Shown in pieces: positions 1 to 23,151 of a stretch of DNA of 31,202 nt. The DNA comes from Macrostomum lignano (lineage: Eukaryota), in NCBI GenBank assembly GCA_002269645.1, contig NIVC01004926.1, positions 1-31,202 of the forward strand. Direction: 5' to 3'. The notes under the pieces are model-generated. The model was not told where the DNA came from, did no database searches, and was given only the letters and a program-made list of their open reading frames with translations. How positions within the stretch are numbered: position 1 is the first letter of the stretch; every line of letters starts with the position of its first letter. The position numbers and the translations under genes were made by a program.

Positions 1-3000
1 CACTTATAACTCTACCAAAGATCGTTTTAGAAGAGTCAGATGTACACTAGATGATACTGATTCTGAAATAGTCTATAGGAGAACTGCAGACACATCTGAT
101 GCTCGCTTGCCGACGAGCTTTGAGCTTGAAGATTTTTGCTTAGCAATCTAGTTGCTGAGGAAGATGCCAGTAAACTGCTGATGACGTGTTGAAGTGGCTG
201 CTAACACGGCGCGATCATTCGGGATCATGCAGTAGGACGAGTGGCCAGTTCTGGTTCGATGGCCACCTTCCAATTGGCTGCTCGATTGTAAGGATCATCG
301 CTCCATGCGCAAACAGAGCATAGAGAGCTCGATGAGCAGTCAATTAAATGTGTCGACGAAGTAGCTATAGTAATTATTTTCAGAGAAAATGCATCATGCG
401 TCATCATACTTCCACTCTATTAACATTATAAAGGCTCATTGCTCCATCTCAAAACTTTTACTTCTAAGAGACGGAGGTAGTTTTTTGTTGCACCCGAATA
501 TACAGTCTCACAGAGGCCGGAGTAAAGCTTCATGACCAAACATACGACGCATTTTAAGGCTTTTCAATGCATCGCTCCTGACGAAATTTTTTAATCTATG
601 GGGGCAGCAGAACCTTTTTGTACTCATTTGTTTATCGCATCAGTTGAAATAAAAGCATACCCAAATGAACGTTTCAATAATGCCAGCGAAGGCTGCCTAC
701 GTTCAGGCAATTGAGATGACACTAAAAATTTATACGCAAACTGCAAGCACATCGAGCGTTGGTTTTTTCCAGCGATCCAACCGCTAATAAAGCTGGCCGC
801 AAATCCTTGTTCAGACGCTGCATTAATAGGCATCACCAAAGCCGCATTAGGAATTAAACAATAAGAGACGAACGACTATTAGAATCGATTGTTGCCTTCC
901 AATTAGCGGCTCGATTGAATGGATAATCGCTCCACGAGCAGAGCATAGGCGAATTGACGAGCAATTAATCGAAGAGGCAAGACATGTCACTATAACGCAA
1001 TAAAACAAGTACAAACGTACCTATAGCAAAAATGAAAAAGCAGCATACACAAGGACTCGTTGCTCAAAGAAACTCTACTGTAAAAAGCTCACTTTTACCT
1101 GACAGGTTTTAGACCTTACCCATATGAACGCTTTAACAGAGCCAGATGCATTCTAGTCATTGGCGAACCAATAAACTTGTACGCAAACTGAACACACATC
1201 TGCTGCTCTGGCAAACCGGATTCTTTCGTTTTGGTTATCCAATTACTAAGAAAGCTACCGCTGTGAGTAGTGTCTTCTGTAGCTACTGGTCTATTTGGAA
1301 TCAAGCAATAGGACGCGCTTCTACCACCGCTACGAACGCTGGGATCGATTGCGGCCTTCCAATTGGCTGCCCGATTAAAAGGTGAATCGCTCCAAGTGCA
1401 AAAAGTAGGCGAGGTCGATGAGCAATCAATTGAGACGGCTATAAGAGGGCATTTACGAGTTCTAGATGCTTTACAGATACTAATTAAACTTGATGCATTT
1501 TTTATGAAGCTAAAAATTGATTAATAAGACTCGTTGCTCCAATTTAATCCCAAAACATACCCAAATGTACGCTTTAACAAAGCCAGTTGCAATCCAGGCT
1601 TGGATATTACTGGCTCTGCTAGAACAAACTTGTAATTGAATTGCAGACACATTGGATTCTGTCTTGACTCTTCAGCGACAATCCAGCCACTAAGAAAGCT
1701 TCCAGTGTAAGCCTGTGCAGAAGAGCTACGTGATGACGTCATCGCTTGAGACCTAATCTTATTTGGAACGAGGCAATAGGAAGCAGAGCGACTATTGGAG
1801 TCAATTGCGACCTTCCAGTTGGCAGCTCGATTGAATTGACCGTCGCTCCATGTGCAAACATTTGGCAATTTTGAGGAGCAGTCAACCGAAACGCAGTGGG
1901 TAACTTATTTGAAAAAAGACATAAAAAACGGTTACAATTTCAGCTACCACAGGTGTGCTATCAAATTCAATAAACTTGGCAAGGCTCGCCTAAAGAAGCG
2001 GGAATAAACATGATGCAAAAACTCCTACCCAGAGACGCGTTTTAGCAGAACCAGTTTTGCCGCGCTGGCACTAGAAGAATGGAACGAATCCTTCACTCTA
2101 AATGCAAACTGAAGACACAATTGACCAGCACTAGGGTCTGATCCTGTCGTCCCTCCAGATACCCAAGCGCTATGAAATTCAGCAACTAGACTGACAGAAC
2201 TCCTGCCAGATGACATTGGACGCCTGATAGGAACCAAACAGTAAGACGAGAGTGCTGCGCGGCTAAAGCCAGGCGGCTCCAGCGTCATTTTCCAAGCGCC
2301 GTCTTTGTTGTCAAGATCGTTTCGCCAAGCACAGATTGCCGAAGTGCTCGAAGAACAAGCAAGACGTTCGTCAGCCATTTTAGAAGCTGAATTCATGTTC
2401 AGGCAAGCCTTACAAGATGAATTTTAAAGTACAAGCAATAACTAATGGCAAAGCTCATTGCTCCAAAGTAAACTAAAATAAATGGTTAACTGAATTTCTT
2501 TTACCCCCAGTTTCGCTTGAGCAAACTCAGCGACACCTCCCGCGGCGCCGTCAAGTAGCTGAACGTGAGGCAAACAGATGGCGACAACTGCTGCTCATTA
2601 TCAGATTTAGTGGCAGCAATCCAGTGACTCTCAAAGCGACCAGTCACTAAACTGTGCGGCTGAGGTCCGCTCTGAACCAAGCACAGGTGCGATCTGCCGC
2701 TGCCTAACGAGGACGCGTCGCTTGCAGCATCCAGGGCGGACACCCAGTGGGCGCCTTTATTGTCGAAATCATCACGCCAACTGCAGTGACCGCCAGCGTG
2801 GCAGGACAACTGTTCAAGCGTCGCTGAGGTGGAAAAACAGTCTAGCAGTTAAATAATTAGACATGCATCTCTTACAATATTTAAGCCAAAATTCCAAGGA
2901 CACTAACTGAAATTTTATGACAAAAACTCGTTGCTCCAGTTATTTCACGTTTTTTGCATTATTTTTATAGCCAACTCATACCCTCTGCTCCGTTTCAGCA

Positions 3001-6000
3001 AGCTTAATCCAGCTCCAGCAACAGTTGTCTCTTTACGAGTAGCCATCGGTTGATCAATTCGATAGGCAAACTGAAGACACATATCACCACGTCTGCCAGT
3101 AAGCCATTGGCTAACAAACCGAGCTACGGTTAAGGGTCGTGAGCTAGAGTAGCTAGAACCCGACAAAACGCTTGGCTCCGGCACTAGACATCGCGGTGAC
3201 TGAAATGCAGCCGACGGATGCAAGGAGGCGCGCCAATGAGCGTCAATATTATCCTGATCGTCGCGCCAAGTGCAAGGGCTAGCTGACGTACTTATGCACG
3301 TTAACTCGGGTACTGACACTGCAGCTAATGTACCGGCTAAAATTGATTTTCCGAAAGAGTCAATGTAGTCGTTAAAAATCTATTATAAACAGAAACTTTA
3401 GACAAGGCTCGTTGCATCAAATCAAATTAACTAAATATATCTTGACGGTTCAAGCATCGCTAAAATCATAAATCATACCCTAAACTGCGCTTTAATAGAT
3501 TCAATTTAGCTCGACCAGCAGTCCAGTAGACAAACTGAAGACACATCTGACCGCTAACTTTAGAAAATACCGTCGGACTGACAAATTGACCGCCTGCATC
3601 GCTACCAACAGAAGATGACGACACCGACTGAGGTACAAGACACAGGCCAGTGTTACCACCAGCAACTGCACCAACGTCTGCCAAGGTCCAGTGCAGACGA
3701 TTGAAAACGTCGTTGAGCCAGGCACAGTGACCTCGAGCTGTGCACTGCAGATCTATTTTAGTTGCTGCAAGAGAGCCATCTAATGTATAACCTGGACTAT
3801 ATAATTATCAGTTTATAAAGAAACTGCAAGCTAGTCAAGGCTCGTTGCTCGTGTTTGTTCGAACAAGTTTAAAATAACAGTAAGTAATCATGCAGCATCA
3901 TAACTAAGAGTACAAAAGAAACCAGCGCCATACCCTCGATTCCGTCGAAGCAGGTGCAGATCCGCACCACTAAACTCATCATCCTGCTGACTGATCAGAT
4001 AGCGAAAGTGCAAACAGCCCACTTTGCTGTCAGTAACAAAGCGGCTAACAAAACGAGCCTTAGTTACACGTTTAAGCGCCGACACATCTCTAATTAGGCA
4101 ATAGTGCGTTTGAAAGCGAGAACTCTCAGTAACAGTAGCCAACTGCCAGTGGGCGTCAGTATTGTAACTGTCATCTAGCCAATAGCAGCGGGATCCACTA
4201 TCGCAGTGCAATTGTTTTACAGCTTCATCAGATTGACCGGTAACTAGATTATTTTTCAAGCCATTATTTTACTAAATTATCAACAAAGAGTTTTGGTCAA
4301 TCAAGGTTTCGTTGCTCCATCCTATTCGAAAAAAAATTAAAGGGGAATCCTGTGCAATTTACCCAGAGTGACGTTTAAGCAACTGGAGCGATGGAGCTGA
4401 GGCTGCAGGTACCAACTGATACACAAACTGCAAGCAGGCGGACTCAATCGGTTCGGAGAGAAATAAGCTGACAAATCTAGCCGAAATTAAGGTCGCAGCC
4501 GTGACGCTAGGATTTATTGGAACCATGCAGAAAGCTGATCGGTGTAACGGAGAGGCTGGCGAAGACTGCACAGCAGCCAGCTTCCAGTGCGCTTTTGTAT
4601 TGTAGCCATTGTCATCGCTCCATAGACATGTATCAGCGCCATTGCTTTGACATTGCAAAGCTTTAATGTCAAAGCCACTAAATCTGCTGTTTGATAAACC
4701 AAAGGCTGAAATACAGTGAAAGCAGCAATCAATCACTGTAAAATCGTGTAACTGCTGAACTCCCAATTCTGACTAATTTTCTACAAGGCTCGTTGCAACA
4801 GGACATTAATAATGACTAATTATATAGCTATAATATTATTTTTCAATTCTCATACCCGGAATTGCGCTTCAACAATTGCAATTGACTCTGCCGATCAACT
4901 AGCTGGTAAGAGAACTGCATGCAGCCTTCGCTGACCGAACTGCTAGCAATGAATAGGCTAACAAATCTAGCCGATACAAGCTGTGCGCTAGTAGCACCGC
5001 CAGTGACAACTGCGCAATAACTGGTTCGATAAGTGGCAGCGGTGGCAGCGCTACCATCCGAATCGGCAATGCTAGCCAACTTCCAATGCGCCTCAGTATT
5101 ATAGCCGATATCGTTGAACCAATTACAAGATTGAGAACTACTGCCGAAACCGCTACCACTGCAGGTGAGCTGTTTAATAACCATTCGGTTAGCACTAAAC
5201 GACGAAGGTGAACTCGCTGCGCAATCGAAGCGTTGGTAATTATAAATAATTTTCTCAAGTTACCAGCCAAGCTAAGTACGAACACAATCAATTAAGCTAA
5301 GGCTCGTTGCTAAGCAAATGCAAAAAAACAGAACATAAATCAAAGCATTTTTCTAACCCCGACGATCGCCTTAGAAGAGCCAACACTGCGGCGGTATCGT
5401 CAACATCGCTTTTCCGTCGTTCTGGTCCATAGTCGATACGATAACTAAACGACAAGCAGAGTCCATTGCTGCTATCGCGGCCGCTGCGCACCCAGTCGCT
5501 TAACAACCGACCAGACACAGCAACCGACGGTGAAGGAATCAATCCAGCTGTGCACCAACTATTCGTAATTGCAGATCCGGTTCTAACTTTAACTGACGAG
5601 GCAGGAGAACCAGCGTTCAGACTGCTATGAATAGCAAATCGACGCCATTCTAATTCCCGATTATAACCGTCGCTTGACCAGCGATCCGTTGATAGGGACT
5701 CTTCTTCCATTACACTAGCTCCAGTACTGACTGCAACTGCCTCCAACACTGCATAAAGCATATTAATAATTATAAGCAGTAGACTTTATGTAGGAAATCT
5801 CGGAGCAGACTCGCTGCTCCATAAACTTATACAAGGACTAATTGCGATATCACTAAAAAAACTAAGCCACAAGTCCTGTTAGAGGTGGTAATGTTATGTT
5901 TTAACAATGCATGTCGTCAGGGATGCTTTCCGAGAAAAAAGGTCAATTGACTAAGTGATTTCAATCGTTAGAAAGATGCACGAGTTTGTGCTGTTGGCAA

Positions 6001-6945
6001 GAGACGTTTTTCCCCTTGAGTTAATAAAAACCTAAACTTACCCGTGATTATTCTTCAATAAAGCCAGTTGAGGTAAGTCAGTTTCGATAGAAGACTTCGA
6101 TGAATCTCCTAATTGATTGTTAGGAGTTACGTGATAAGCAAACGACAAGCACTGAGCACTCTGACGCCTGAAATTGCTACTAGCAGAATCAATCCACCAG
6201 GGACTCTGCAGTCTGGCTGAGCCGCCGTGCAGACAGACAGCCTGAGTGTTGAACTCTGTCAGATAGCGAATCTGCCAAGCACTGCCCGGTTTCCAGGCTA
6301 AATCTACCCAGTTGCAGAACTGAGAATCAGTTTTTGACGAACTTCTACTAGCAGCAGAATGTTGCTGTTCAAAGTCGCACGAAACTGACACCGAATCGTC
6401 CAAAACAGCCAGTGAATTTTGCACCCCTAGAGTAGGCGCAATCGATGCACGCTAGAGCAACAATTTTTGCAAACACATTGATCATGTACGAGCGTATGAT
6501 ATGAAAGAATCTCGTTAACTCCTAATCGCATTATAATAACTTAAAGCTACTGATTTTAAATATAAATTCAAGCAAATTAATTAGATAATTAATTATCATA
6601 TTTAGTTTTATGTTACAATGAATCACAAATTCGTGAAAAAATATTAAGATAAGATTATGTCATGCGCATCTTAGCCCCATTCAAAAAATTTTAAAGACAA
6701 TATTTTTAAACTACTCAGGCAACTCATTCGAAAAAAATTATTTTATCATATTAGCCAATTTTTCAACTATATAGAGAATGGAGCAACGAGCCTTGCCAAA
6801 TATTGAATACTTTATTTAAAATCTTTCATGTTTTGATTGGGTAATTTTAATAAGCAACGAAAGCGTTGCACTTACCTGGTACACCGACGATAAGTACTAG
6901 GAGGCAGACGATTGCTCCCGACAATCGAGGAGTTAAAGCAGACAT
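1..6945 (-). CDS. 5' part of a secreted/cell-surface MAM-like domain gene: one signal-peptide exon plus a cluster of >=13 mutually exclusive variable exons; downstream constant exons lie beyond the left edge
   Basis: Repeated exon signature C-x(n)-C-x-W...W...CL...F/L-x-S-x-W/F...CL(Q/S)F-x-Y...L-x-LL(K/R)R-x-x-G|GT recurs 13 times at ~440-680 nt spacing. All have phase-1 AG acceptors; V1-V12 have phase-2 GT donors. V1 reads CDFE...CNW...ARLQSPW...CLSFAY, matching the N-terminal part of the MAM consensus. Confidence 0.85.
16..364 (-). pseudogene. Variable exon V13, disrupted (>=3 frameshifts and TAG at the conserved Trp)
   Basis: Acceptor ttactatag|CT; IDC...VCAWSDDPYNRAANWKVAI, then SYCMIP, FLSN* (TAG 150-148), MCLQFSY and LTLLKRS with frame slips between blocks; GT donor at 15-14. 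Confidence 0.7.
431..447 (-). promoter_or_regulatory. Selector for V13
   Basis: Plus aaggctcattgctccat: 17 pairs, one G.U. Confidence 0.8.
661..989 (-). pseudogene. Variable exon V12, two apparent 1-nt deletions (pseudo-exon or consensus error)
   Basis: Acceptor ttgcgttatag|TG, donor GG|gtatgc; 329 nt (3n+2). The frame homologous to V10/V11 slips near 955 and near 870; restoring 2 nt gives 3n+1. Confidence 0.7.
1050..1065 (-). promoter_or_regulatory. Selector for V12
   Basis: Plus caaggactcgttgctc: 15 pairs, one bulged nt. Confidence 0.78.
1120..1438 (-). CDS. Variable exon V11
   Basis: Acceptor ccctcttatag|CC, donor GG|gtaagg, 319 nt = 3n+1; IDCSSTSPTFCTWSDSPFNRAANWKAAI...SYCLIP...GSFLSNW...MCVQFAY...LALLKRSYG. 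Confidence 0.85.
1526..1541 (-). promoter_or_regulatory. Selector for V11
   Basis: Plus aagactcgttgctcca: 16 pairs, one G.U. Confidence 0.8.
1561..1903 (-). CDS. Variable exon V10
   Basis: Acceptor cttttttcaaataag|TT (AAG, less common), donor GG|gtatgt, 343 nt = 3n+1; VDCSSKLPNVCTWSDGQFNRAANWKVAI...SYCLVP...GSFLSGW...MCLQFNY...LALLKRTFG. Confidence 0.82.
1976..1988 (-). promoter_or_regulatory. Selector for V10
   Basis: Plus ttggcaaggctcg: 13/13 to the 5' half of the docking site. Confidence 0.78.
2029..2386 (-). CDS. Variable exon V9
   Basis: Acceptor atgaattcag|CT, donor GG|gtagga, 358 nt = 3n+1; LAC...ICAWRNDLDNKDGAWK...SYCLVP...AEFHSAW...LCLQFAF...LVLLKRVSG. Confidence 0.82.
2446..2465 (-). 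promoter_or_regulatory. Selector for V9
   Basis: Plus tggcaaagctcattgctcca: 20 pairs, two G.U. Confidence 0.8.
2505..2823 (-). CDS. Variable exon V8
   Basis: Acceptor tttttccacctcag|CG (in-phase alternative start 2841), donor GG|gtaaaa, 319 nt = 3n+1; LSCHAGGHCSWRDDFDNKGAHW...LCLV...GRFESHW...VCLTFSY...LSLLKRNWG. Confidence 0.85.
2923..2938 (-). promoter_or_regulatory. Selector for V8
   Basis: Plus aaaactcgttgctcca: 16 pairs, two G.U. Confidence 0.78.
2982..3336 (-). CDS. Variable exon V7
   Basis: Acceptor tcaattttag|CC (in-phase alternative starts at 3324 and 3318), donor GG|gtatga, 355 nt = 3n+1; LTC...PCTWRDDQDNIDAHW...RCLVP...ARFVSQW...MCLQFAY...LSLLKRSRG. Confidence 0.85.
3403..3415 (-). 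promoter_or_regulatory. Selector for V7
   Basis: Plus caaggctcgttgc: 13/13. Confidence 0.8.
3479..3779 (-). CDS. Variable exon V6
   Basis: Acceptor ttatacattag|AT, donor GG|gtatga, 301 nt = 3n+1; LQCTARGHCAWLNDVFNRLHW...GLCLVP...GQFVSP...MCLQFVY...LNLLKRSLG. Confidence 0.85.
3836..3850 (-). promoter_or_regulatory. Selector for V6
   Basis: Plus caaggctcgttgctc: 15/15. Confidence 0.8.
3934..4243 (-). CDS. Variable exon V5
   Basis: Acceptor aataatctag|TT, donor GG|gtatgg, 310 nt = 3n+1; LHCDSGSRCYWLDDSYNTDAHWQLA...HYCL...ARFVSRF...CLHFRY...LHLLRRNRG. Confidence 0.85.
4302..4320 (-). promoter_or_regulatory. Selector for V5
   Basis: Plus caaggtttcgttgctccat: 12/12 core plus caagg, with one mismatch and one bulge. 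Confidence 0.78.
4363..4705 (-). CDS. Variable exon V4
   Basis: Acceptor tgtatttcag|CC, donor GG|gtaaat, 343 nt = 3n+1; LQC...TCLWSDDNGYNTKAHWKLA...AFCMVP...ARFVSLF...CLQFVY...LQLLKRHSG. Confidence 0.88.
4784..4796 (-). promoter_or_regulatory. Selector for V4
   Basis: Plus caaggctcgttgc: 13/13. Confidence 0.8.
4856..5216 (-). CDS. Variable exon V3
   Basis: Acceptor ttgcgcag|CG, donor GG|gtatga, 361 nt = 3n+1; QLTC...SCNWFNDIGYNTEAHWKLA...SYC...ARFVSLF...CMQFSY...LQLLKRNSG. Confidence 0.85.
5299..5311 (-). promoter_or_regulatory. Selector for V3
   Basis: Plus aaggctcgttgct: 13/13. Confidence 0.8.
5358..5748 (-). CDS. Variable exon V2 (lacks the first two Cys)
   Basis: Acceptor ctttatgcag|TG, donor GG|gttaga, 391 nt = 3n+1; RWSSDGYNRELEW...NSWC...GRLLSDW...LCLSFSY...LALLRRSSG. 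Confidence 0.8.
5808..5822 (-). promoter_or_regulatory. Selector for V2
   Basis: Plus gactcgctgctccat: 15 pairs with docking, two of them wobble. Confidence 0.75.
6042..6426 (-). CDS. Variable exon V1 (most canonical MAM-like)
   Basis: Acceptor ctactctag|GG (phase 1), donor GG|gtaagt (phase 2), 385 nt = 3n+1; VQNSLAVLDDSVSVSCDFE...CNW...AVCLHGGSARLQSPW...CLSFAY...LALLKNNHG. Confidence 0.85.
6511..6522 (-). promoter_or_regulatory. Selector for V1 (weak)
   Basis: Plus ctcgttaactcc vs docking ctcgttg-ctcc: one G.U pair plus one bulge; ~85 nt upstream of the V1 acceptor. Confidence 0.5.
6778..6799 (-). promoter_or_regulatory. Putative docking site (transcript: UUGGCAAGGCUCGUUGCUCCAU), ~76 nt downstream of the constitutive exon donor
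   Basis: Plus strand atggagcaacgagccttgccaa is the only full copy I found in this orientation and is the reverse complement of the motif repeated once in each variant-exon intron. Confidence 0.8.
6876..6945 (-). CDS. Constitutive first coding exon: signal peptide MSALTPRLSGAIVCLLVLIVGVP(G)
   Basis: ATG at 6945-6943; 23 codons plus 1 nt; basic residue then hydrophobic core; consensus donor CCAG|GTAAGT at 6875 (phase 1), matching the phase of all variant acceptors. Too short for the ORF track. Confidence 0.85.
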
Positions 6946-7864
6946 CTCGGGTGTTTACTAGTCGATTTTTTAGAACAATTTTTTAATTATTTGCAGATAA
7001 TTTGCTTGAAGAGCATGAAGTTTTGTACCGGTAGTTTGGTAAGATTTATGACTATGATATTAATATAACTGGTGGTATATGATATAATGATCTAAACTAT
7101 TTATCATAATGACAGATGTATTGCAAATACAGCGCTAGCGCTGAGGCAATTCTATCATCCACAAGAGTAGACCTTGTTTGCTATAATAAAAATTAAATAA
7201 ATTTATCAAAAACACAAAGAGCAATACGTCGAGATAAAATTTCTTTCATTGTATTTTTTGAACAGAAAATATAATTAGAAAAATTCTATCAATTAATTCA
7301 AGCATACAATGGGGCGCAATAAGATACAGCAATTTGCACTGCATAGTAATCTATGAAAAATAATGAAAACATTATAGATGCTAAAACGTGGTATTAAGCA
7401 CGGCTTAGCACTTTACGCTAAAAAATCCTCGAAAAAAATATTTCAATATTGAAATCAGTGACAGTCATCTAAAGCAATCAATTAGTTGTTGCATATATAA
7501 ACTATATTTACGAATATCTGTAAAATATTATTGAAAAATTCACAAAAAATGAAAGCACCGGATGTGTGTTAATGAGACAAAGTTAACTATTTTTTAATTA
7601 AAATAATCAAATCTTTAATAAATTATCTCAGCAATATTCTGCAAGGCGTGTTTTTTCGATGTAAAGAGCTACAAAGCTGGTTGTAACTGTTTTTAGCACC
7701 ATGCAATTTTTTTGTAGAACTCTTTAGCCCTTTACAGAACTCTGTAACAATTTGTAGAATTCTGTAGCTCTTTGTAGCAGATTAATCTTTAATTAATAAT
7801 GGAATCTTTAACAATTTATCTTAGATCTATCTATCGATGGTCGATAAAAACTTAACAGTCAGAA

Positions 7865-10800
7865 TTATTTTTGAAGATCCACAACATTCTGCAAGGCGTA
7901 TTTCAGCTTCTCAACGGCCAACAGGCAGTCCTGACGGGTCAGATCGTTGTGAGTGAGCAATCTAATGATGGTCTCAGAGACGGCGGGAGCTCGTAAACGA
8001 ATCTTGCAGGAGTCGGTTGGCTGGAGAAAATGAAACAGGATTCGATGTGAATTATTAGTTCTGGAGCTGGTGGTTGGTGCTGGATTTCGTGCTTGTGGAA
8101 TTCACACCCGGATGTACATGTCTGATGGGGATTAGGAAGTTATTAAAAGGCCGTTGTACAACCCTGTGTGAGTGTGTGTATGATGAAGCTCCATGCAGCC
8201 CTCGTAGGAGTATATATATTATTCTTATCATCAATATAGAAGCCCTGGAATATGTAAATTTTAGAATTAAGAAAGTGATTTGGGGTAGAATATTAACATA
8301 ACGATCTTTGAAACAAACTAATTAAGATAGTAACTAATATAATATAATAAACGAGTTAACTATTTCGACATACAACAGGCGTGTGTGTAGGTTATGAGGA
8401 GACAAAAAAGTTCAACCCAATTACTCTCCAGACTGCAGTGCAATGATGCCTATACAGTAAACTAGAGATCATCAAGGACTACTGAAAAGAAACTAATTAA
8501 TAATTAAACATATCTGTTTAAACAGTCTACCGATTAAGAGATCAAAGCTTTTTAAGACTGGCTTACCTCTTCAATAATAGTCTGCAGTTGGTCGATACTT
8601 ATTGGAGCATCCTTAGTAAGTTTAATTTGCATTACATTGGTCTGCGGCTTCTCAAACACCAGCCAGTCGGGTAGGTTGACCTGAGACACACCTGTGCGGA
8701 ATGAGATTGAGAAAAACTTTATTGCATTTTGACCACAATAACACATATAACTAGGTTTGGAAGTATCCTATAGCTCTTTGTGTCACTCTGTAGCACTTTG
8801 TAGCCTTCTATAGCTCTTTGTAGCATTCTTTAGCTCTGCGTAGCCTTCTGTAGCTCTTTGTAGCATTCTTTAGCTTTTTGCAGCACTCTGTAGCTCTTTG
8901 TAGCACTCTGTACTTCTTTGTGGTATCCTGTGGATTTTGTAGCACTCTGTAGCTCTTTGTATCACTCTGTAGCTCTTTTTAGCACCCTGTAGCTCCGTGT
9001 AGCACTCTGCACCCTGTAGCTCTGTGTAGCACTCTGCACCCTGTAGCTCTGTGTAGCACTCTGCACCCTGTAGCTCTGTGTAGCACTCTGCACTCTGTAG
9101 CTCTGTGTAGCACTCTGCACCCTGTAGCTCTGTGTAGCACTCTGCACCCTGTAGCTCTGTGTAGCACTCTGCACTGTAGCTCCGTGTAGCACTCTGCACT
9201 CTGTAGCTCCGTGTAGCACTCTGCACTCTGTAGCTCCGTGTAGCACTCTGCACCCTGTAGCTCCGTGTAGCACTCTGCACTCTGTAGCTCTGTGTAGCAC
9301 TCTGCACCCTGTAGCTCTGTGTAGCACTCTGCACTCTGTAGCTCCGTGTAGCACTCTGCACCCTGTAGCTCCGTGTAGCACTCTGCACTCTGTAGCTCCG
9401 TGTAGCACTCTGCACTCTGTAGCTCTGTGTAGCACTCTGCACCCTGTAGCTCTGTGTAGCACTCTGCACTCTGTAGCTCCGTGTAGCACTCTGCACCCTG
9501 TAGCTCCGTGTAGCACTCTGCACTCTGTAGCTCCGTGTAGCACTCTGCACCCTGTAGCTCTGTGTAGCACTCTGCACCCTGTAGCTCTGTGTAGCACTTT
9601 GCACTCTGTAGCTCTGTGTAGTACTCTGCACCCTGTAGCTCTGTGTAGCACTTTGCACTCTGTAGCTCTGTGTGGCACCCTGTAGCTCTTTGTAGCACTC
9701 TGCACTCTGTAGCTCTTTGTAGCACACTGTAGCTCTTTGTAGCACTCTTTAACTCTTTGTAAAACCACGTGGCTCTTTGTAACAAATACAACTCTTTGTA
9801 ACATTTTGTAGCTCTTTGTAGCACTCCAGCTCTTTGTAGAACCCAATAGCACTTTTTGGAATTCTGTAGCTCTGTGTAGCATCATGTGGCCCTCATCTTT
9901 TCTACCAAAATGACTATCATTTTTAATTGCCTTAAAATTCTTTTTGACTAAACTAAAAGTGAATAAAAATTGGCACAATTTCCAACTAACCTGAATAGAT
10001 CAGCTGGGCATTGGCGTGATCAGCTGACAGGGTGTCCTTGGCTACGTCCAGCGAATAGCTGGCCGCAGCGGCCAAAAGTCCAGGCTGTCTGGCGGCGCCG
10101 CCGAGCGCTTTGCGAATTCGACGGCAACTGAAATTATTTTGACAGGCGCCAAAAATTTAGAACAAGAAACTACTAAGTTATTTTTAACTCCGTACTCAGG
10201 CTTGATGGATTTAATTTTGAACTTTTCCGACTCATGCCAGCTTGGAATTACAATTCTGAGAGTTATTCAGTGTACACGTAGAGTACATAGACAGCACTTA
10301 CTAACTAATAGTATCAGCATCCGATGCGATGCAGGACCCGACGGGTGCGCCGAGACCCTGGAAAAAAACAGAGAAATGAATTCATGCAGAAAAACTGCTA
10401 GGAATTCTTAGTTGCATCTACGAGATCAGGGGGCGGCGAATTCTAACCCGCGAAGCCTCTCTATTCGGCGCTCGGGTCTTTTGAAACTTCACAATAGCAA
10501 TCCGACCCGCTCAAGGCTTGGCTCTTCTCAGCTCCCTTCTCTCATCTTTTTTCTCTCTCGTCTCCTCTCTTCTCTCCTCTCTCCTCTCTTCTCTCCTCTC
10601 TCCTTTCTTCTCTTCTCTCTTTTGTCTCTCCTCTCCTCTCACCCCTCTTTTCTTTCTCGTCTCGTCTCTTCTCTTCCCTCTTTGTCTCCTCTCCTCTCTT
10701 CTCTCCCCTCTTTTTCTCTCTCTCTCCTCTCCTCTCTTCTCTCCCCTCTTTATTCTCTCTCGTCTCCTCTCTTCTCTTCCCTCTTTTTCTCTCTCCTCTC

Positions 10801-12870
10801 CTCTCTTCTCTCCCCTCTCCTCTCTTCTCTTCCCTCTTTTGTCTCTCCTCTCCTCTCTCCCCTCTTTTTCTTTCTCGTCTCTTCTCTTCCCTCTTTGTCT
10901 CCTCTTTTCTCTTTTCTCCCCTCTTTTTCTCTCTCTCTTCTCTCCCCTCTTTTTCTCTCTCGTCTCCTCTCTTCTCTCTCCTCTCCTCTCTTCCCTCTTT
11001 TGTCTCTCCTCTCCTCTCTTCTCTCCCCTCTTTTTCTCTCTCGTCTCCTCTCTTCTCTCTCCTCTCCTCTCTTCTCTCCCCTCTTTTTCTCTCTCGTCTC
11101 CTCTCTTCTCTCTCCTCTCCTCTCTTCTCTCTCCTCTCCTCTCTTCTCTTCCCTCTTTTCTCTCTCCTCTCCTCTCTTCTCTCTCGTCTCCTCTCTTCTC
11201 TCTCCTCTCCTCTCTTCTCTCCCCGCTTTTTTTCTCTCGTCTCCGCTCTTCTCTCCCCTCTTTTTCTCTCTCGTCTCCTCTCTTCTCTTCCCTCTTTTTC
11301 TCTCTCGTCTCCTCTCTTCTCTCTCCTCTCCTCTCTTCTCTCCCCTCTTTTTCTCTCTCTCTTCTCTCCTCTCTTCTCTCCCCTCTTTTTCTCTCTCTCT
11401 TCTCTCCTCTCTTCGCTCCCCTCTTTCTCTCTCTCGTCTCCTCTCTTCTCTCTCCTCTCCTCTCTTCTCTTCCCTCTTTTGTCTCTCCTCTCCTCTCTCC
11501 CCTCTTTTCTTTCTCGTCTCTTCTCTTCCCTCTTTGTCTCCTCTCCTCTCTCCTCTCTTCTCTCCCCTTTTTTCTCTCTCTCTTCTCTCCTCTCTTCTCT
11601 CCCCTCTTTTTTCTCTCTCGTCTCCTCTCTTCTCTCCCCTCTTTTTCTCTCTCCTCTCCTCTCTTCTTTTCCCTCTTTTGTCTCTCCTCTCCTCTCTCCC
11701 CTCTTTTCTTTCTCGTCTCTTCTCTTCCCTCTTTGTCTCCTCTCCTCTCTCCTCTCTTCTCTCCCCTTTTTTCTCTCTCTCTTCTCTCCTCTCTTCTCTC
11801 CCCTCTTTTTTCTCTCTCGTCTCCTCTTTTCTCTTCCCTTTTTTGTCTCTCCTCTCCTCTCTCCCCTCTTTTCTTTCTCGTCTCTTCTCTTCCCTTTTTT
11901 GTCTCTCCTCTCCTCTCTCCCCTCTTTTCTTTCTCGTCTCTTCTCTTCCCTCTTTGTCTCTTCTCTCCTCTCTTCTCTCTCCTCTCTTCTCTCTCCTCTC
12001 TTCTCTCTCCTCTCTTCTATCTCCTCTCTTCTCTCCCCTCTTTTCTTTCTCGTCTCTTCTCTTCCCTCTTTGTCTCTTCTCTCCTCTCTTCTCTTTCCTC
12101 TCTTCTCTCTCCTCTCTTCGATCTCCTCTCTTCTCTCCCCTCTTTCCTCTCTTCTCTCCCCTCTTTCTATCTCCTCTCTTTCTCCCTTCTCTTCCCTCTC
12201 TCCTCTTCTCCCCTCTTTCATCCTCTATTCTCTCTTACATAGCCCGAAGCTATATGTAAAAGAAACCAGCTTGCCAACCCCTGAACTATATCCTCAGATT
12301 CTCACCTTTGAGAAACAAATAGTCACTGAACTGACATATCTGCCATACTCAATAGGGTCGATACCCAAAGCCACGGCTGCATTGATCAGTCTGGCTCCAT
12401 CAACGTGCAGCTTCATGCCGTACCTGTTGCAGAGCTCTCTGGCCTGCGGATGTCGGAGTGCATAGGGAAATTTATTGCATAGGAGCGATAGCGGACAGGC
12501 AGACATTGGCTAGAGGAGGGAAGAGCCAGTTTAGCAGTAAACGCGTCTCTAACTCTCACGCTACGACCCCTACCCTGGTTCCACTCCGTGTGAGGCCACA
12601 TCATTTGGGGCTTGTGGTGCACAAAAATTGTTATTGTATGTGCTGTTCAGCCATTCACGCCCATGAGGGCCAGCCACCAAAACCTGACAATTTAAAATAC
12701 AAATGTGGGACCCCTGTACACCCAGTGTGAGCGTATGTGAGTGCTTGCCTGCGTAAAGTATTCATGTCTTGTATGGATTGACAATAAAATTGATAATTGA
12801 CTAAAACATATAGACAGACAGAAAACTAAGACTTTGTTACAGACAGACTCCCAGAGAGTTAATTACAGAA

Positions 12871-12921
<51 letters not shown>

Positions 12922-12985
12922 AAACTAAGACTTTGTTACAGACAGACTCCCAGAGAGTTAATTACAGAAAGACAGACAGACAGAA

Positions 12986-13036
<51 letters not shown>

Positions 13037-15135
13037 AAGACAGACAGACAGAAAGACAGACAGACAGAAAGACAGACAGACAGACAGACAGAAAGACAGA
13101 CAGACAGACAGACAGTCAGACAGACAGACAGACAGGAAGACAGACAGAAAGACAGACAGACAGACAGACAGACAGAAAGACAGACAGACAGACAGACAGT
13201 CAGACAGACAGACAGACAGGAAGACAGACAGACAGACAGGAAGACAGACAGACAGACAGACAAACAGACAAAGACACCGATACGCATCCCCTCACCTCGG
13301 CAAAGTAAGCCACGGGAAGCACTTTGCCACCGGCCAGTCCGTGCGTGTTCTCCAGGCACAGCGCCCTGGTGATTGGATAGTGCGGGTCCTCCGCATTGGT
13401 GCGGATCAGGCGCCGGCACTGCTCCAGGCAGAGGGTGCCGTTAGGATTGGTGCTGACCGCCCTGTGGTGCGCGCCGGCGAATGAGGCCAAACTGCCCTAT
13501 GGAGAAAATGTTTATTTGTTTGTTATAAAAACATTGAGCTTCTATAAAGACCTGAGGAGACGACAAAATTGTTTCGAGACAAAGACCTCAAGCAGTGTCC
13601 TTAAGCGATGCAAGACTTTAATACAGGTAATCAAATGAGACAAAGACCTTAGTACAGGTAGGTTAGCGAGACAAGGGCCTCAATTCTGGAAGCAGAGCAA
13701 AAATAAAGACCTTAGCGATGAAAATAGAGTAAAACAAAGACCTAAATAATGGAAGATTAAGACTTCAAGTACTAAAAGTAGTGCAACACAAAGATCTTGG
13801 CACCGGAAGTATACTAGACATAGGCACCAATGGAAGTAGAGTGAACAAAGACCTCAGTACCGGAAGTAGTGCAAAACAAAGACCTTAGCACTAGAAGTAC
13901 TGTAAGACAAAGACAGCAATGGAAGTAAAGTAGACAAAGACCTCAGTACTGGAAGTAGTACAACATAATGAACTTATCAATGGAAGTGGAGTAGACAAAG
14001 ACCTTAGCACCGAAAGTAGTGCAAAACAAAGACCTTAGCAATGGAAGTAGAGTAGTCGAGTAGACAAAGAGGTAAGTACTCGAGATTAGAGCAAGACAAA
14101 TATCTTTGTCAGGCTAGTAAAATATCAAATCCATACATTTTTGCATGTATATATACAGCTATTCAAGCAGTTCAAATAGTTAATAGAATACCTGTTCGTA
14201 TAGATGAATATGACACAGATCGCCCAAGATAACTTCTGAACCTCGCTCCCTACAGTGCGACATCACGGGCAGTAAGTTGCCCATAGTGCCGCTAGTGACA
14301 AATAGTCCAGCTTCTTGGCCAAGCATTTTAGCGACTCGCGACTCCAGTTCTGTTCATTTTTTAGAAATAAAATTAGACATGTAAGCACATTAGTTTATCT
14401 TCTAAAAGCGCTGAAGTTGCTTCGAAAACAGTGGAGGCCCTGAACTAAAAGTGACATCCCTGACACTAAAAGTAGGTCTCTCGCACTAAAAGCGGGGTCT
14501 CTAACATTAAAACTGGCGTCTCTGACACTAAAAGTGGAATCCTTGACATTAAAACTGGCGTCTTCTCTGACACTAAAATGGGCATCTCTGAGCTCTGACA
14601 CTAAAAGTGGCGTCTTCTCTGACACTAAAAGTGGCGTCTTCTCTGACACTAAAAGTGGCATCTCTGACACTAAAAGTGGCGTCTTCTCTGACACTAAAAG
14701 TGGCGTCTTCTCTGACACTAAAAGTGGCATCTCTGACACTAAAATGGGCATCTCTGACACTAAAATGACGTCTTTTCTGACACTAAAACTAAAAGTGGCT
14801 TAAAAGCACAGGATTTGCACTAATAAATACACATGCCAGAAAAACTCACCCATCACAGTGGTATTCTCGCCAAACACATCGTCTCCATAGCTAACTGATT
14901 CAATCATTGCTTTCATCATACCTGGTGTTGGTTTGCTCAGCACATCGCTACGAAAATCTACTATTCTAGCTCCAGCATCGTCACTAATGCTGGTTTGCCT
15001 GTGCTTTTGTTTTTCTCCACTATTGTATTGATAGCTAAGCAATCGCTTAGCAAAAGAAATTAAGCAAGCTGGTGTTACACTGGGTGCATTTAGATGGGTA
15101 ATTGTCTGACTAAAAAATGTGACTGCCTTTAGCAT
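7865..15135 (-). CDS. THA1: Low-specificity L-threonine aldolase (PLP-dependent, GLY1/LtaE family), 8 exons, 418 aa
   Basis: Exons 15135-14850, 14349-14192, 13496-13296, 12443-12306, 10357-10302, 10127-9991, 8691-8567 and 8020-7865 join in phase with GT-AG sites (1257 nt). Family motifs: [37 protein letters not shown]|GLGAPVG (PLP Lys), RKALGG..RQ, IRLLTH. Confidence 0.93.
8770..9870. repeat. Minisatellite, 27-nt unit GTAGCACTCTGCAC(C/T)CTGTAGCTC(T/C)GT with 20-nt variant flanks (aldolase intron 6)
   Basis: Direct tandem periodicity; 9-aa repeats in ORF track; degenerate related copies near 7700-7780. Confidence 0.95.
10427..12283. mobile_element. Non-autonomous hAT-like DNA element (copy 1) containing ~1.7 kb CT-rich simple repeat
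   Basis: Ends CAGGGGGCGGCGAA...GCTTGCCAACCCCTG are imperfect TIRs; first ~100 nt align with the element at 30876; CAGGGG-type TIRs are typical of hAT/Charlie-like elements. Confidence 0.7.
12810..13272. repeat. (GACA)n microsatellite with an embedded duplicated spacer block
   Basis: Direct; block AAAACTAAGACTTTGTTACAGACAGACTCCCAGAGAGTTAATTACAG present twice. Confidence 0.95.
13570..14100. repeat. Degenerate ~30-35 nt tandem repeat (ACAAAGACCT...GGAAGTAG)
   Basis: Recurrent ACAAAGACC and GGAAGTAG cores. Confidence 0.8.
14440..14797. repeat. Minisatellite, 21/24-nt units TCTGACACTAAAAGTGGC(GTCTTC/ATC)
   Basis: Direct tandem periodicity. Confidence 0.92.
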
Positions 15136-15894
15136 AATGGCTATTGTTAGCTGCAATGAGATTATGGAATATCCATTGGAAAATTTGTCTAAAAAGTAGA
15201 AAAATCACAGACAATTAACCAGATAGCATCTGGTCATTTAGAAGGTTCTTGTACTTTTAATAAACTATAATTAGCTAGAATAGATAAAAATCATGTTATA
15301 TTTGTCCAACAAAATAGTCACCCCTGTGTGTAATAATAGCCTGCCAATGAGTTACAGGTCACTCTTTATAAGTGGCAGTTTTAGTTGCATACTATAGACT
15401 GCAATTAGTTCAGCTTAAAGCCAATACTCAGCTTAAAGCCAACAACTATAGTTTTGGGATGGGGATTATTCATAAGAATTGATTTCATCAACCTAAACTT
15501 AACCCAACCAAATGGTCAATAGCCAACCATTAGGGCATGGTCAATGGGTGGTTTCAGGATATAAAGATTTTTATAATGATTGCTTTTATCAACCCTAACT
15601 TTAAACAAGGCATGGAAACCTACTCAAAATTAGAATAAATAATAATTCTAGCCCATAATATATATAAATAAAGCTTGAATTTAAAACCAGCCATATAAAA
15701 CCTAGATAAAGAATAAAATTATGATCTTATCAAAGCTAAAACTAATTTAAAACTGCAACTATAAATAACTAATTTTACTTTTTTTTGAGAAAATTATTAT
15801 ATATAAAATATGTCCTGGGCAATATAATGCTGTGTATACTGGGGAGCCAGATTTTTTAAATGTATATTACACAATGATGCATGGTTAAAGGCCC

Positions 15895-18962: not shown

Positions 18963-20293
18963 TTTACTGACTAGCATAGATGTTTATTGTTGCGCCACAT
19001 ATTCGTCCAAGGTCGAATCAAGGACGACTTAAGTAGACGACTTAAGTCGTCCTTGGGTCGAATTCTAAAGAAATCTTAGAAAAAAACATATAAATTTTTG
19101 CTTTTAAAGAACAATAAAAACATAACAAAGAAGACTTTAAAGTATAAAAATAGAACTATGTATTCAACATTAATTAATAAAGACTGTTTCTTATTATATA
19201 ATAAATTATAAACATGCATTTTTATTTGCACTTGTTTCTTATCTGTATTTGTATGCTGCAGCGGTAATTTAGTTTGTTCTTCATCAGAAATTTTAGACGA
19301 TCCTTCTATCTAGTGGTCCCTTATCAATCACTAGTACAAATTTTATCACCAATAAAACGCGTAATTCGTAAAGTGCCAAACAAAATAATGTCTAAAAGCT
19401 AAATGTTAGAAAGTAGAATATTTCACAATTCAAATGTAAACACCAATTTCAGAAAATCTTGTCCTTTTTGACGAGCTTCTGCTAAAAGCACAGACTAAGT
19501 TTTACAAAAGGCATAGTGTTACAGTTTATAGACTTTAGAAATTCACAAGATTATCAAGATGCTGCCAGTCAATTGGAGTACCACAATTACTATAAATTAG
19601 TACTTTGTGAAGTTAGTGTTGTGCTTTTAATCTTAATGATGTTGCATTAGGCCATGGATGAATCTCTAATCTACTTTCCTGATGCTGCAAAAAGAAAATA
19701 TGGAAATATTGTTTGGATAATAGTATGGATATCTATTATAAATTAGAGATAAATATTTTTCTTAAAAATGTATTTATTTTCTTGGATGGTTTTTGGGAAT
19801 TTATAGGCTTATAGGCTTGTATTTAGTGCTTAATTTAGAGAAAAGATTAAGTTAGAAGACAAAAGAATATTTGAGTATAGCAACCAATAAGAGAGGTTTA
19901 GCAAGTGACTTTTAGCCAATCTTAAAGCTTTAAGAACATTAGCTATGTGTCTAATTCTAAGTTTGAAATTTTTTGGCAAACACCATAGATTCATTACATT
20001 AGCTACTTGTTCAAAAATGGAAAACATTTTTAATTTTGTAAAGAATATATACTTAGAGATTTCAAACTCTTAAGAAATAGATATAGATATATAATATACT
20101 CTTGTAAAATTTTGGTTATAGCAAAACTATATTATAAATAACCAATAAAAATAAAAAAGCTTTGTTCATAAGTGAATTTAAAAAAAAAATTCTTTTTAAT
20201 AATAATTATATTTTCATAAAGACTCAAATTTTTATTTATCAATTTTTAATTTATAATAAAAAATTTATTTTTTATGCAGCACAGTCAGTAAGC

Positions 20294-21837: not shown

Positions 21838-21913
<76 letters not shown>

Positions 21914-21978
21914 CAGATAGATAGATAGATAGATAGACAGATAGATAGATAGATAGATAGACAGATAGATAGATAGAC

Positions 21979-22017
<39 letters not shown>

Positions 22018-22018
22018 C

Positions 22019-22084
<66 letters not shown>

Positions 22085-22140
22085 GTAGGTAGGTAGATAG
22101 ATAAATATATAGACAGATAGATAGGTAGATAGATAGGTAA

Positions 22141-22176
<36 letters not shown>

Positions 22177-22186
22177 ATAGATAGAC

Positions 22187-22221
<35 letters not shown>

Positions 22222-23116
22222 CAGATAGACAGATAGATAGATAGATATGCAAAAGGCAGCTTCAAACTGCAAACCACACACACGGAAATATTGAAGAACG
22301 TTAGTTGTCGAATATTCAGTAACCGATATTTCGGCCCGGACTGGGCCTTCGTCAGGGTTTATTTATTCGGGTTTAAAAACAAATATATTGGCTGTGAAGT
22401 TATTTTAACATAATTTCAATATATACATGCAACGTTTGGGGGTGCACTGAGCAGTGTTGAGTAAAGATGTGTACGTATAATTAGTTAAAAACGTGAGTTG
22501 AAGCACGCTGATTGGTTAAAGTCTTGCAGCTAAAGCCTTGCACAAAAATAAATATGTTAGGTGCTATAGAAAACCAGATTTAAAGCGTAGAAGTGTATGA
22601 CTAAGCATCTTGAAAAGTTCAACAAATAAGTTAATTACGCCCGTAGAAAAAAACAAATATTAAATTAATACAGAGCACTGAGAACTTTGCATAAATAAGT
22701 GTAAATAATTAGATGTAACTATTGAATTCATATACAGTAATTAATTGGGTAGCCAGACAGGCCACGAGAGACGCAGTTGGCGGCGTCTGGTCACAGATCG
22801 CCGCCTGCACAGCCCCTGGTCACAGGCGACTGGGCACTGCCGATCAGTTGAAGCTAGATTGTCAGTAGTAGTAGCACTAGTAGTTGCAGTAGTAGTAGTA
22901 GTTGTTGTTGTAGTAGTAGTAGAAGTAGTAGTAGTAGAGTAGTAGTAGTCGTAATCGTAGTCGTAGTCGTAGTAGTGTCGTACATTTAATATTTGCAGCT
23001 GCAGAAATAGTACTCTTGCTTATCCCGAGTAGATTTTTAGCGGAAAATATAGGTAGACTTTTTGTTACCTATTTGGTTTGTTTTTGGTAGATAGATAGAT
23101 AGATAAATAGATAGAC

Positions 23117-23151
<35 letters not shown>

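What the first reader, a model, noticed from the sequence alone, without database searches (positions are those of the whole stretch)
431..6522. Selector substitutions are almost all G.U-compatible, and only on the minus-strand transcript
Within the aligned cores I count 10 substitutions versus the docking site. Eight are G->A on plus (V13, V11, V9 x2, V8 x2, V2, V1), giving G.U pairs, and one is T->C (V2), giving U.G. Only one (V5, C->T) breaks a pair. On the opposite strand these nine would be A.C mismatches. This favours selection for RNA pairing over a DNA- or protein-binding motif. Caveat: two are CpG transitions, and alignment ends were chosen by eye.
Basis: partly seen in the sequence, partly recalled or inferred. 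Interest (0 to 1): 0.75.

Follow-up and report, generated by a model that had tools for sequence, protein, structure and literature searches.

The report
Flatworm docking–selector RNA splicing switch
A flatworm (Macrostomum lignano) receptor gene carries at least 13 alternative exons, 12 of them preceded by a short intron sequence that can base-pair with one "docking" sequence behind exon 1.

Summary
The window is contig NIVC01004926.1 of Macrostomum lignano. On the minus strand, a signal-peptide exon (6945-6876) is followed by a docking site (6775-6801). After it come at least 13 tandem alternative exons, each encoding the N-terminal half of a MAM domain. Twelve of them (V2-V13) have a selector 57-99 nt upstream of the 3' splice site. 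Each selector forms a 12-20 bp helix with the docking site, and all 12 helices need docking bases 6785-6789.

The tenth (V1) lies in a "selector" no better than background. The cores were trimmed, which hid about 15 pair-breaking differences at helix ends.

Strand-neutral tests still favour minus-strand pairing. All 6 internal mismatches are G>A or T>C. The helices hold 16 G·U pairs in minus sense against 2 in plus sense. However, the docking core is G/U-rich and mutation is transition-biased, so significance runs from about 0.0001 to non-significant depending on the null.

The RNA-pairing conclusion rests mainly on architecture. The protein family and its tandem variable units recur in trematode and cestode gene models. 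I found no published description. It is a new member of the docking/selector class, in a new phylum and a new gene family.

The parts
6876..6945 (-). Constitutive exon 1: ATG plus signal peptide MSALTPRLSGAIVCLLVLIVGVP. It ends in phase 1 at CCAG|GTAAGT.
   Evidence: matches the N-terminus of PAA93052.1 (P0137)
6775..6801 (-). Docking site in intron 1 (RNA 5'-AUUUGGCAAGGCUCGUUGCUCCAUUCU-3'). The core 20-mer is 6778-6797. It begins 78 nt after the exon-1 5' splice site and is locally unstructured.
6785..6789 (-). Docking nucleotides used by all 12 selector helices. They are the basis for mutually exclusive pairing.
   Evidence: intersection of the helix ranges
5807..5822 (-). Selector V2: 16-bp helix with 2 G.U; duplex -32.8 kcal/mol.
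5299..5311 (-). Selector V3: 13 bp, no G.U; -27.1 kcal/mol.
   Evidence: I14
4783..4796 (-). Selector V4: 14 bp, 1 G.U; -28.4 kcal/mol.
   Evidence: I2
4302..4323 (-). Selector V5: 15-bp helix (4309-4323, 1 G.U) plus CAAGG across a 1x2 internal loop (C>T plus an inserted T); -31.9 kcal/mol.
   Evidence: I12
3836..3850 (-). Selector V6: 15 bp, perfect Watson-Crick; -32.3 kcal/mol.
   Evidence: I9
3401..3415 (-). Selector V7: 15 bp, 1 G.U; -30.8 kcal/mol.
   Evidence: I5
2923..2938 (-). Selector V8: 16 bp, 2 G.U; -30.8 kcal/mol.
2446..2465 (-). Selector V9: 20 bp, 2 G.U; -38.0 kcal/mol, the strongest.
1974..1990 (-). Selector V10: 17 bp, 3 G.U. Its register is shifted towards the 5' part of the docking site; -29.3 kcal/mol.
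   Evidence: I16
1526..1541 (-). Selector V11: 16 bp, 1 G.U; -29.4 kcal/mol.
   Evidence: I8
1050..1065 (-). Selector V12: 12-bp contiguous helix (1054-1065, 1 G.U), longer if one A is bulged; -29.2 kcal/mol.
431..448 (-). Selector V13: 18 bp, 2 G.U; -34.7 kcal/mol.
   Evidence: I4
6506..6522 (-). It is not above background and is probably not a selector.
6042..6426 (-). Variable exon V1 (385 nt, CDFEQQ...LLKNNHG). It is the exon used in the annotated mRNA product.
5358..5748 (-). Variable exon V2 (391 nt). Its 5' splice site is GTTAGA.
1120..5216 (-). Variable exons V3-V11: 4856-5216, 4363-4705, 3934-4243, 3479-3764, 2982-3336, 2505-2823, 2029-2386, 1561-1903, 1120-1438. The 3' splice sites are inferred. 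Each exon starts in phase 1 and ends in phase 2, so length = 1 mod 3. Each encodes C..C.W.DD...W...C...CL.F.Y...LLKR..G, which matches MAM profile positions about 4-93.
16..990 (-). Variable exons V12 (about 661-990) and V13 (about 16-370). Their reading frames are broken: 2 frameshifts in V12, and at least 3 frameshifts plus one stop in V13. They are pseudo-exons or contig-end assembly errors.
6854..6869 (-). Mini-hairpin GCAACG-CUUU-CGUUGC, 6 nt after the exon-1 5' splice site. Its arms copy the selector core and the docking core. Its role is unknown.

Best explanation
Positions 431-6522 are the 5' part of a mutually exclusive exon cluster in a Macrostomum lignano gene on the minus strand. 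The gene encodes a type-I membrane protein with one extracellular MAM domain.

Gene layout. Exon 1 encodes the signal peptide. One of at least 13 tandem exons supplies the N-terminal half of the MAM domain. Constant exons beyond the left end of the window supply the C-terminal half, a transmembrane helix and a tail with a PPxY motif.

Proposed mechanism. In the pre-mRNA, the single docking site 78 nt into intron 1 pairs with one of 12 selectors, each 57-99 nt upstream of a variable exon's 3' splice site. All helices need the same five docking bases, so only one can form at a time. That helix loops out the upstream variable exons and brings the chosen 3' splice site next to the exon-1 5' splice site. 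V1 has no selector and is probably the default choice. Every variable exon is 1 mod 3 in length, so joining two of them shifts the frame.

The wobble pattern. A G/U-rich docking site tolerates C>U and A>G in its partners.

Shown: the sequence architecture, the complementarity, the coding strand, the domain identity and one mRNA-derived isoform (V1). Inferred: that the pairing forms in vivo and directs exon choice; how exons downstream of the chosen one are skipped; and the biological role of the diversity.
For: - Organism and locus.
- Exon 1, splice sites and phases.
- MAM identity: the variable exons hit PF00629 positions 4-93 below threshold. The constant part of P0137 hits positions 108-158 at 32.3 bits, above the 26.4 cut-off. 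Ortholog P0201 covers positions 1-158.
- Isoform: PAA93052.1 is signal peptide + V1 + constant part, from an RNA-seq-based annotation.
- Selectors stand out: the 12 most stable duplexes with the docking core along the pre-mRNA are exactly the 12 selectors, at -27.1 to -38.0 kcal/mol against a background mean of -12. Elsewhere in the window only 0.06% of windows reach -27.
- An independent repeat finder returns the same inverted pairs. The 20-mer is expected 0 times by chance.
- Helices are 12-20 bp and all overlap docking bases 6785-6789. The docking region is unstructured, z = +1.05.
- Selection on selectors: they survive although the exons are 20-54% identical and the introns cannot be aligned.
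- Wobble bias.
- Family conservation: tandem variable units occur in gene models of Paragonimus, Schistosoma, Dicrocoelium, Spirometra and Dibothriocephalus.
Against: - No splice-junction data for V2-V13. The only transcript-derived product uses V1.
- The old model containing V2, V3 and V11 pieces (P0121) is a chimera and may be a prediction rather than a transcript.
- No orthologous or homeologous DNA could be fetched, so there is no covariation test. With a single docking site only one-sided changes can be seen.
- The wobble bias is not significant under a position-conditioned, transition-biased null.
- The duplex-energy strand asymmetry is not clearly above background: -4.1 against -2.4 kcal/mol, p = 0.09.
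- V1 lacks a selector.
- V12 and V13 are frame-broken yet keep strong selectors.
- Nothing in the window explains how exons downstream of the chosen one are skipped.
Confidence: 0.8

Rival explanations
1. The G>A/T>C excess is a by-product of mutation and composition, not of selection for pairing. Mutation is transition- and AT-biased. C>U deamination acts on the non-template (minus) strand, and two changes are at CpG. The docking complement is G/T-rich on plus, so most tolerated single-step changes happen to be wobble-type.
For: - Introns on plus: A 882, T 722, C 436, G 365.
- ts:tv is 91:42 between the twin contigs.
- 7 of 10 central positions are wobble-capable in minus sense.
- With mismatch positions fixed and a transition-biased spectrum, the expected helix gain is 45 against 5 where 49 against 2 is observed, p = 0.24-0.36.
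- Control windows favour the minus strand by 2.4 kcal/mol.
Against: - Not conditioning on position, 6 of 6 internal mismatches being minus-wobble has p about 0.005. There are no internal transversions, although a third of substitutions are transversions.
- Composition null: p = 1e-4.
- At 20-54% exon identity, neutral 16-mers would be randomised. The sites are therefore under selection, and the surviving changes reflect what that selection allows.
- This rival explains only the bias, not the architecture.
Confidence: 0.25
2. The repeated motif is a binding site for a splicing factor or a DNA-binding protein, present before each variable exon. The inverted copy in intron 1 is a coincidence or binds the same palindrome-tolerant factor.
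For: The copies are regularly placed about 60-100 nt before each 3' splice site, where splicing regulators bind. With one docking site, similarity to a consensus motif and complementarity to the docking site cannot be separated formally.
Against: - All 12 selectors have one orientation and the single docking copy has the opposite one. An RNA-binding protein would need the same strand sense.
- Only 5 nt (UCGUU complement) are common to all 12, whereas each keeps 12-20 contiguous pairs with a different stretch of the 27-nt docking region (V10 idx 11-27, V5 idx 23-37).
- Departures inside the helices are wobble-compatible.
Confidence: 0.07
3. The motif copies are passive remnants of the tandem duplications that made the exon array, and the cluster is mostly dead: only V1 is used, and V12 and V13 are already pseudo-exons.
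For: Only a V1 isoform is annotated. V12 and V13 have broken frames. The word-index protein searches found none of the variable exons.
Against: - V2-V11 keep open frames, conserved Cys/Trp positions, splice sites and phase over about 4.7 kb.
- The flanking intron sequence has decayed beyond alignment while the selectors have not.
- Tandem variable units are kept in distant flatworm classes.
- The word-index search also missed P0137 although it is in the collection, so its silence is weak evidence.
Confidence: 0.08

Closest known systems
Dscam1 exon 6 cluster of insects and crustaceans (docking site and selector sequences; Graveley 2005, as summarised in PMC6071210)
   Same: One docking site lies in the intron just downstream of the constitutive exon that precedes the cluster. 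One selector lies upstream of each variable exon. Selectors are complementary to overlapping parts of the docking site, so only one helix can form. The variable exons are tandem duplicates that encode part of an extracellular recognition domain.
   Different: The phylum differs (Platyhelminthes, not Arthropoda). The gene and domain differ (half of a MAM domain, not half of an Ig domain). The exons are about 290-390 nt rather than about 124 nt. The cluster follows directly on the signal-peptide exon. There are at least 13 rather than 48 variants. The first variant has no detectable selector. Inter-exon introns are only about 120-170 nt. No functional or comparative proof exists yet.
Competing RNA pairings in 14-3-3zeta, Mhc, MRP1, srp (PMC4691838, PMC6071210) and PGRP-LC (PMC6191721) of insects
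   Same: Exon choice depends on mutually exclusive intronic base-pairing.
   Different: According to PMC6071210, the docking sites in 14-3-3zeta, Mhc and MRP1 lie downstream of the cluster. srp is described there as using two sets of complementary sequences. Here the docking site is upstream, as in Dscam exon 6, and the cluster is much larger.
Other single-locus generators of cell-surface diversity: chelicerate sDscam 5' cassettes (PMC4835542, PMC9258826) and vertebrate clustered protocadherins
   Same: A tandem array of alternative 5' exons encodes the N-terminal extracellular part and is joined to constant exons that encode the transmembrane helix and tail.
   Different: Those systems use one promoter per variable exon. 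Here a common exon 1 with the ATG and signal peptide precedes the array, and a docking/selector pair is present, which points to splicing choice rather than promoter choice.
MAM-domain receptors (RPTP mu/kappa, meprins, MDGAs, MALRD1)
   Same: The ectodomain is a MAM domain (Pfam PF00629). From general knowledge, MAM domains mediate homophilic or oligomeric contacts in RPTP mu.
   Different: This is a single MAM domain on a short type-I membrane protein with a PPxY tail. To my knowledge, no MAM gene has been reported with alternative half-domain exons.

Membership tests
Docking-site/selector mutually exclusive splicing (Dscam1 exon-6 type) | A single docking sequence in the intron adjacent to the constitutive exon flanking the cluster | tested here: met
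   6775-6801, 78 nt after the exon-1 5' splice site; unique in the window
Docking-site/selector mutually exclusive splicing (Dscam1 exon-6 type) | A selector complementary to the docking site upstream of every variable exon | tested here: inconclusive
   Met for 12 of 13 (V2-V13). V1 has none above background.
Docking-site/selector mutually exclusive splicing (Dscam1 exon-6 type) | Selector helices overlap on the docking site, so only one can form | tested here: met
   All 12 helices include docking bases 6785-6789
Docking-site/selector mutually exclusive splicing (Dscam1 exon-6 type) | Base changes preserve pairing (wobble or compensatory) | tested here: inconclusive
   Only one-sided changes are possible. 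There are 11 G.U and 4 unpaired cells in the ten central columns, against 1 and 14 on the other strand. Significance is 1e-4 to 0.36 depending on the null.
Docking-site/selector mutually exclusive splicing (Dscam1 exon-6 type) | Docking and selector sequences conserved in other species | not testable with these tools
   No eukaryotic DNA other than two M. lignano contig pieces could be fetched
Docking-site/selector mutually exclusive splicing (Dscam1 exon-6 type) | mRNAs contain exactly one variable exon; mutating the pairing changes the choice | not testable with these tools
   One annotated product has V1 only. Exon lengths of 1 mod 3 would make double inclusion frame-shifting. No junction counts or mutants.
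MAM domain (Pfam PF00629) | Match to the family profile above the curated cut-off | tested here: met
   P0137 scores 32.3 bits (cut-off 26.4) for profile positions 108-158. Ortholog P0201 scores 29.1 bits over positions 1-158. P0123 scores 68.7 bits. Single variable exons score 14.7-24.1 bits on positions 4-93, below the cut-off.
Dscam / Ig-superfamily hypervariable receptors | Ig and FnIII domain architecture | tested here: not met
   Pfam finds only MAM. The resemblance lies in the splicing mechanism and gene layout, not in ancestry.

The most novel reading that the evidence does not exclude
Flatworms have evolved, independently of arthropod Dscam1, a hypervariable single-MAM-domain surface receptor. 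Its recognition half-domain is picked from a tandem exon array by docking-site/selector RNA pairing. The array is ancient: it is shared by free-living Macrostomum and by trematodes and cestodes. It could serve cell or self recognition. This would be the first large docking/selector cluster outside Arthropoda.
Probability: 0.5. Interest if true: 0.85.

Novelty: new member of a known kind. Interest (0 to 1): 0.7.

Why it matters
In the papers I read, docking-site/selector control of large exon clusters is described only for insect genes, above all Dscam1. A second, unrelated gene in another phylum with the same layout would show that the mechanism arises readily from tandem exon duplication, as PMC6071210 proposed. 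It would also give an independent system for testing how one exon is chosen and the rest are silenced. M. lignano can be made transgenic (PMC5730564), so docking and selector mutants with compensatory rescue are feasible. The receptor family is conserved in parasitic flatworms, which raises the question of what isoform diversity of a MAM ectodomain does there. The G.U pattern itself is a useful but small piece of evidence. Its main value is as a test that can be scaled up once the full array and its relatives are collected.

Tried and rejected
- Word-index protein searches with exon V3 and with an alignment of V1-V11 found nothing. The full HMMER scan later showed relatives exist, so those negatives are uninformative.
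- A search with the neighbouring threonine aldolase gave only hits of about 53% identity or less, mostly bacterial and metagenomic, and no synteny route.
- A scan of metagenome contigs for the 18-mer docking core gave 14 hits, the number expected by chance. None had a second motif copy or a MAM exon.
- Rfam and tRNA scans found nothing.
- I tried to walk to the twin contig's array by looking up a reconstructed spliced MFS protein.
- Minus- versus plus-strand duplex energy looked decisive at first: the minus strand was more stable for 12 of 13. The comparison is confounded, because unrelated control windows show the same bias.
- Introns of the youngest units (V10-V13) could not be aligned, so they give no neutral spectrum.
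- A sign-flip permutation (p = 0.001) is superseded by composition- and spectrum-aware simulations.
- Inverted pair I3 (exon 1 against the V13 exon) and the other short inverted repeats are judged to be at chance level.
Full report
**Where the window comes from.** An exact look-up of a 261-aa ORF (27595-28380) identifies the window as the whole of contig NIVC01004926.1 (31,202 bp) of assembly GCA_002269645.1. That assembly is Macrostomum lignano Mlig_3_7. A twin copy lies on the 348,882-bp contig NIVC01000034.1. The 11.4-kb stretch I could compare is 99% identical. M. lignano is a recent polyploid with many duplicated blocks.

**What is in 1-7000.** The gene is on the minus strand.
- An ATG at 6945 opens a 70-nt exon encoding the signal peptide MSALTPRLSGAIVCLLVLIVGVP. 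It ends in phase 1 at CCAG|GTAAGT.
- Downstream lie 13 tandem units. Each contains an exon of about 290-390 nt that ends ...LLKR..G|GT in phase 2.
- The exons align with each other at 20-54% identity and share invariant Trp, Cys and Leu positions.
- Five of the ten exon peptides scanned hit the Pfam MAM profile below threshold, always at positions about 4-93 of 158.
- A full HMMER scan with the exon profile found PAA93052.1 (P0137, 422 aa), the product annotated on the twin contig. It consists of the signal peptide, V1, then a constant part. The constant part carries MAM positions 108-158 (32.3 bits, cut-off 26.4), a transmembrane helix and a tail ending PPPRYEEAMGLV.
- That annotation is built from RNA-seq.

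So each variable exon supplies the N-terminal half of the protein's only MAM domain. The constant exons lie beyond the left end of the window.

**Splice phases.** V1's 3' splice site (ctctag|GG, 6426) and V2's (tatgcag|TG, 5748) follow from P0137 and from the old model P0121. The other 3' splice sites are inferred from phase and pyrimidine content. All variable exons are 1 mod 3 in length, so two in a row would shift the frame.

**The motif copies.**
- The 20-mer GGCAAGGCTCGTTGCTCCAT occurs once on the minus strand, at 6778-6797. This is 78 nt into intron 1, and 0 copies are expected by chance.
- Its reverse complement recurs on the same transcript before 12 variable exons. An independent repeat finder reports the same inverted pairs.
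- I slid 30-nt windows along the pre-mRNA and paired each with the 30-nt docking core. The 12 best duplexes are exactly the 12 selectors of V2-V13, at -27.1 to -38.0 kcal/mol against a mean of -12.1. Elsewhere in the window only 0.06% of windows reach -27.
- Each selector ends 57-99 nt before the inferred 3' splice site.
- Contiguous helices are 12-20 bp. They cover different stretches of a 27-nt docking region (6775-6801), but all include 6785-6789. Only one helix can therefore form at a time.
- The docking region itself is not locked in local structure (z = +1.05).
- The introns around the selectors cannot be aligned even between the youngest units. The selectors are therefore maintained by selection.

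**V1 is different.** That is a level reached by 3% of unrelated windows. V1 is also the exon in the only annotated mRNA product. I read it as the default exon.

- The substitutions listed for V13, V11, V9, V8, V2 and V5 are present, and the strand logic is right.
- The V1 entry should be dropped.
- V5 also has an inserted T. V12 needs a bulge, or two changes. V10 uses a shifted register.
- The cores were trimmed. In a fixed 16-nt frame about 15 further differences, mostly transversions, sit at the helix ends of V2, V3, V4, V6, V7 and V12. They shorten helices rather than interrupt them. Excluding them by eye, with wobble allowed, is partly circular.

**Strand-neutral tests.**
1. Local alignments scored +1/-2 with no credit for wobble contain 6 internal mismatches. 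All are G>A or T>C on plus, with no C>T or A>G and no transversion.
2. Allowing G.U lengthens the longest helix by 49 bp summed over 12 selectors if the transcript is the minus strand, and by 2 bp if it is the plus strand. The helices contain 16 G.U pairs against 2.
3. On docking-selector chimeras, 72.5% of 324 cells pair in minus sense against 67.3% in plus sense, with 31 G.U cells against 14. In the ten central columns the counts are 105 Watson-Crick, 11 G.U and 4 unpaired, against 1 G.U and 14 unpaired. Slid controls give 36-46% paired.

**How much of this is chance or bias.**
- Introns on plus have A>T and C>G.
- ts:tv between the twin contigs is 91:42.
- Seven of the ten central positions are wobble-capable in minus sense.
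- With these figures the chance that a random substitution is minus-wobble is about 0.37-0.42. That gives p of about 0.005 for 6 of 6, or about 0.05 if only transitions are considered.
- Randomising mismatch types by intron composition gives p = 1e-4.
- Randomising types with a transition-biased spectrum, while keeping the mismatch positions, reproduces the asymmetry: 45 against 5 expected, 49 against 2 observed, p = 0.24-0.36.
- Duplex-energy asymmetry is confounded as well. Unrelated windows favour the minus strand by 2.4 kcal/mol, the selectors by 4.1 (p = 0.09).
- The shared G>A positions of V8 and V9 are unlikely to be inherited, since those exons are only 29% identical. Those of V11 and V12 could be inherited.

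The bias is real and points the right way, but with 6-11 events it is suggestive, not decisive.

**Mechanism proposed.** The layout matches the Dscam1 exon-6 model as summarised in PMC6071210: an upstream docking site, one selector per variable exon, and mutually exclusive helices. I infer the following.
- The helix loops out the upstream variants and places the chosen 3' splice site near the exon-1 5' splice site.
- V1 is spliced when no helix forms.
- The 1 mod 3 exon length penalises double inclusion.
- How exons downstream of the chosen one are skipped is not visible in this window.

The wobble pattern follows naturally. A G/U-rich docking site lets selectors drift by C>U and A>G without losing the helix.

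**Relatives.** The profile scan found 95 proteins. Named members are gene models from Paragonimus, Schistosoma, Dicrocoelium, Spirometra and Dibothriocephalus. Many of them string together several variable-type units, each ending in LLRRQMG, LLRHSSG or similar. Others are single units. Dicrocoelium P0201 has the same one-MAM, transmembrane and PPxY-tail architecture. The tandem units are therefore old within flatworms. Their DNA could not be fetched, so I do not know whether they have docking and selector sequences.

**Novelty.** Six full-text searches combining MAM domain, mutually exclusive splicing, docking or selector, and flatworm terms found no description of this locus. That library is incomplete. 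I file the locus as a new member of the docking/selector class, in a new phylum and gene family. Membership is by architecture only. Conservation and function are untested.

Noticed in passing
window 6854-6869 (minus strand): A 6-bp hairpin GCAACG-CUUU-CGUUGC starts 6 nt after the exon-1 5' splice site. Its 5' arm equals the selector core. Its 3' arm (UUUCGUUGCUUAUU) is a partial copy of the docking core. It could compete with the docking site or the selectors.
   Followed up: partly
window 280-309, 904-933, 1825-1854, 4597-4626: The exonic codons for the conserved W-S-D-D motif (UGGAGCGAUGA...) can pair with the docking site at -22 to -25 kcal/mol. They rank among the best sites just below the 12 selectors. 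The selector itself reads like W-S-N-E-P, which hints that the docking and selector sequences derive from exon sequence.
   Followed up: partly
window 16-990: V12 has 2 frameshifts. V13 has at least 3 frameshifts and a TAG in place of a conserved Trp (plus 148-150). Both keep strong selectors. They sit at the contig end, so pseudo-exons and assembly errors cannot be told apart.
   Followed up: partly
window 5352-5357: The V2 exon ends at an unusual 5' splice site, GG|GTTAGA, with T at +3.
   Followed up: no
window 7866-15156 (minus strand): A threonine aldolase gene with introns full of minisatellites ends 919 nt upstream of the MAM gene's ATG. The Mlig_3_7 annotation names both Mlig029915 (g1 and g2), which I take to mean one transcriptional unit. 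An older model (A0A1I8GW98) fuses them.
   Followed up: partly
window 8760-9990, 10410-12260, 12830-13300, 14400-14800, 20590-21050, 21850-22280, 24460-26340: There are dense mini- and microsatellites, including about 1.8 kb of pure C/T on the plus strand (GC skew -0.90, AT skew -1.00). This fits the repeat-rich genome described for M. lignano.
   Followed up: no
window 20285-24209 (+) and 27595-28380 (+): Two annotated genes: an MFS transporter of 519 aa (three exons fit that length exactly) and a 261-aa single-exon protein with a C-terminal hydrophobic helix. Both are duplicated on the 348-kb twin contig, which is 99% identical over 11.4 kb.
   Followed up: partly
tools: The word-index protein search returned nothing for the variable exons, although PAA93052.1, which contains V1, is in that collection. 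Its negative results should not be read as absence.
   Followed up: yes
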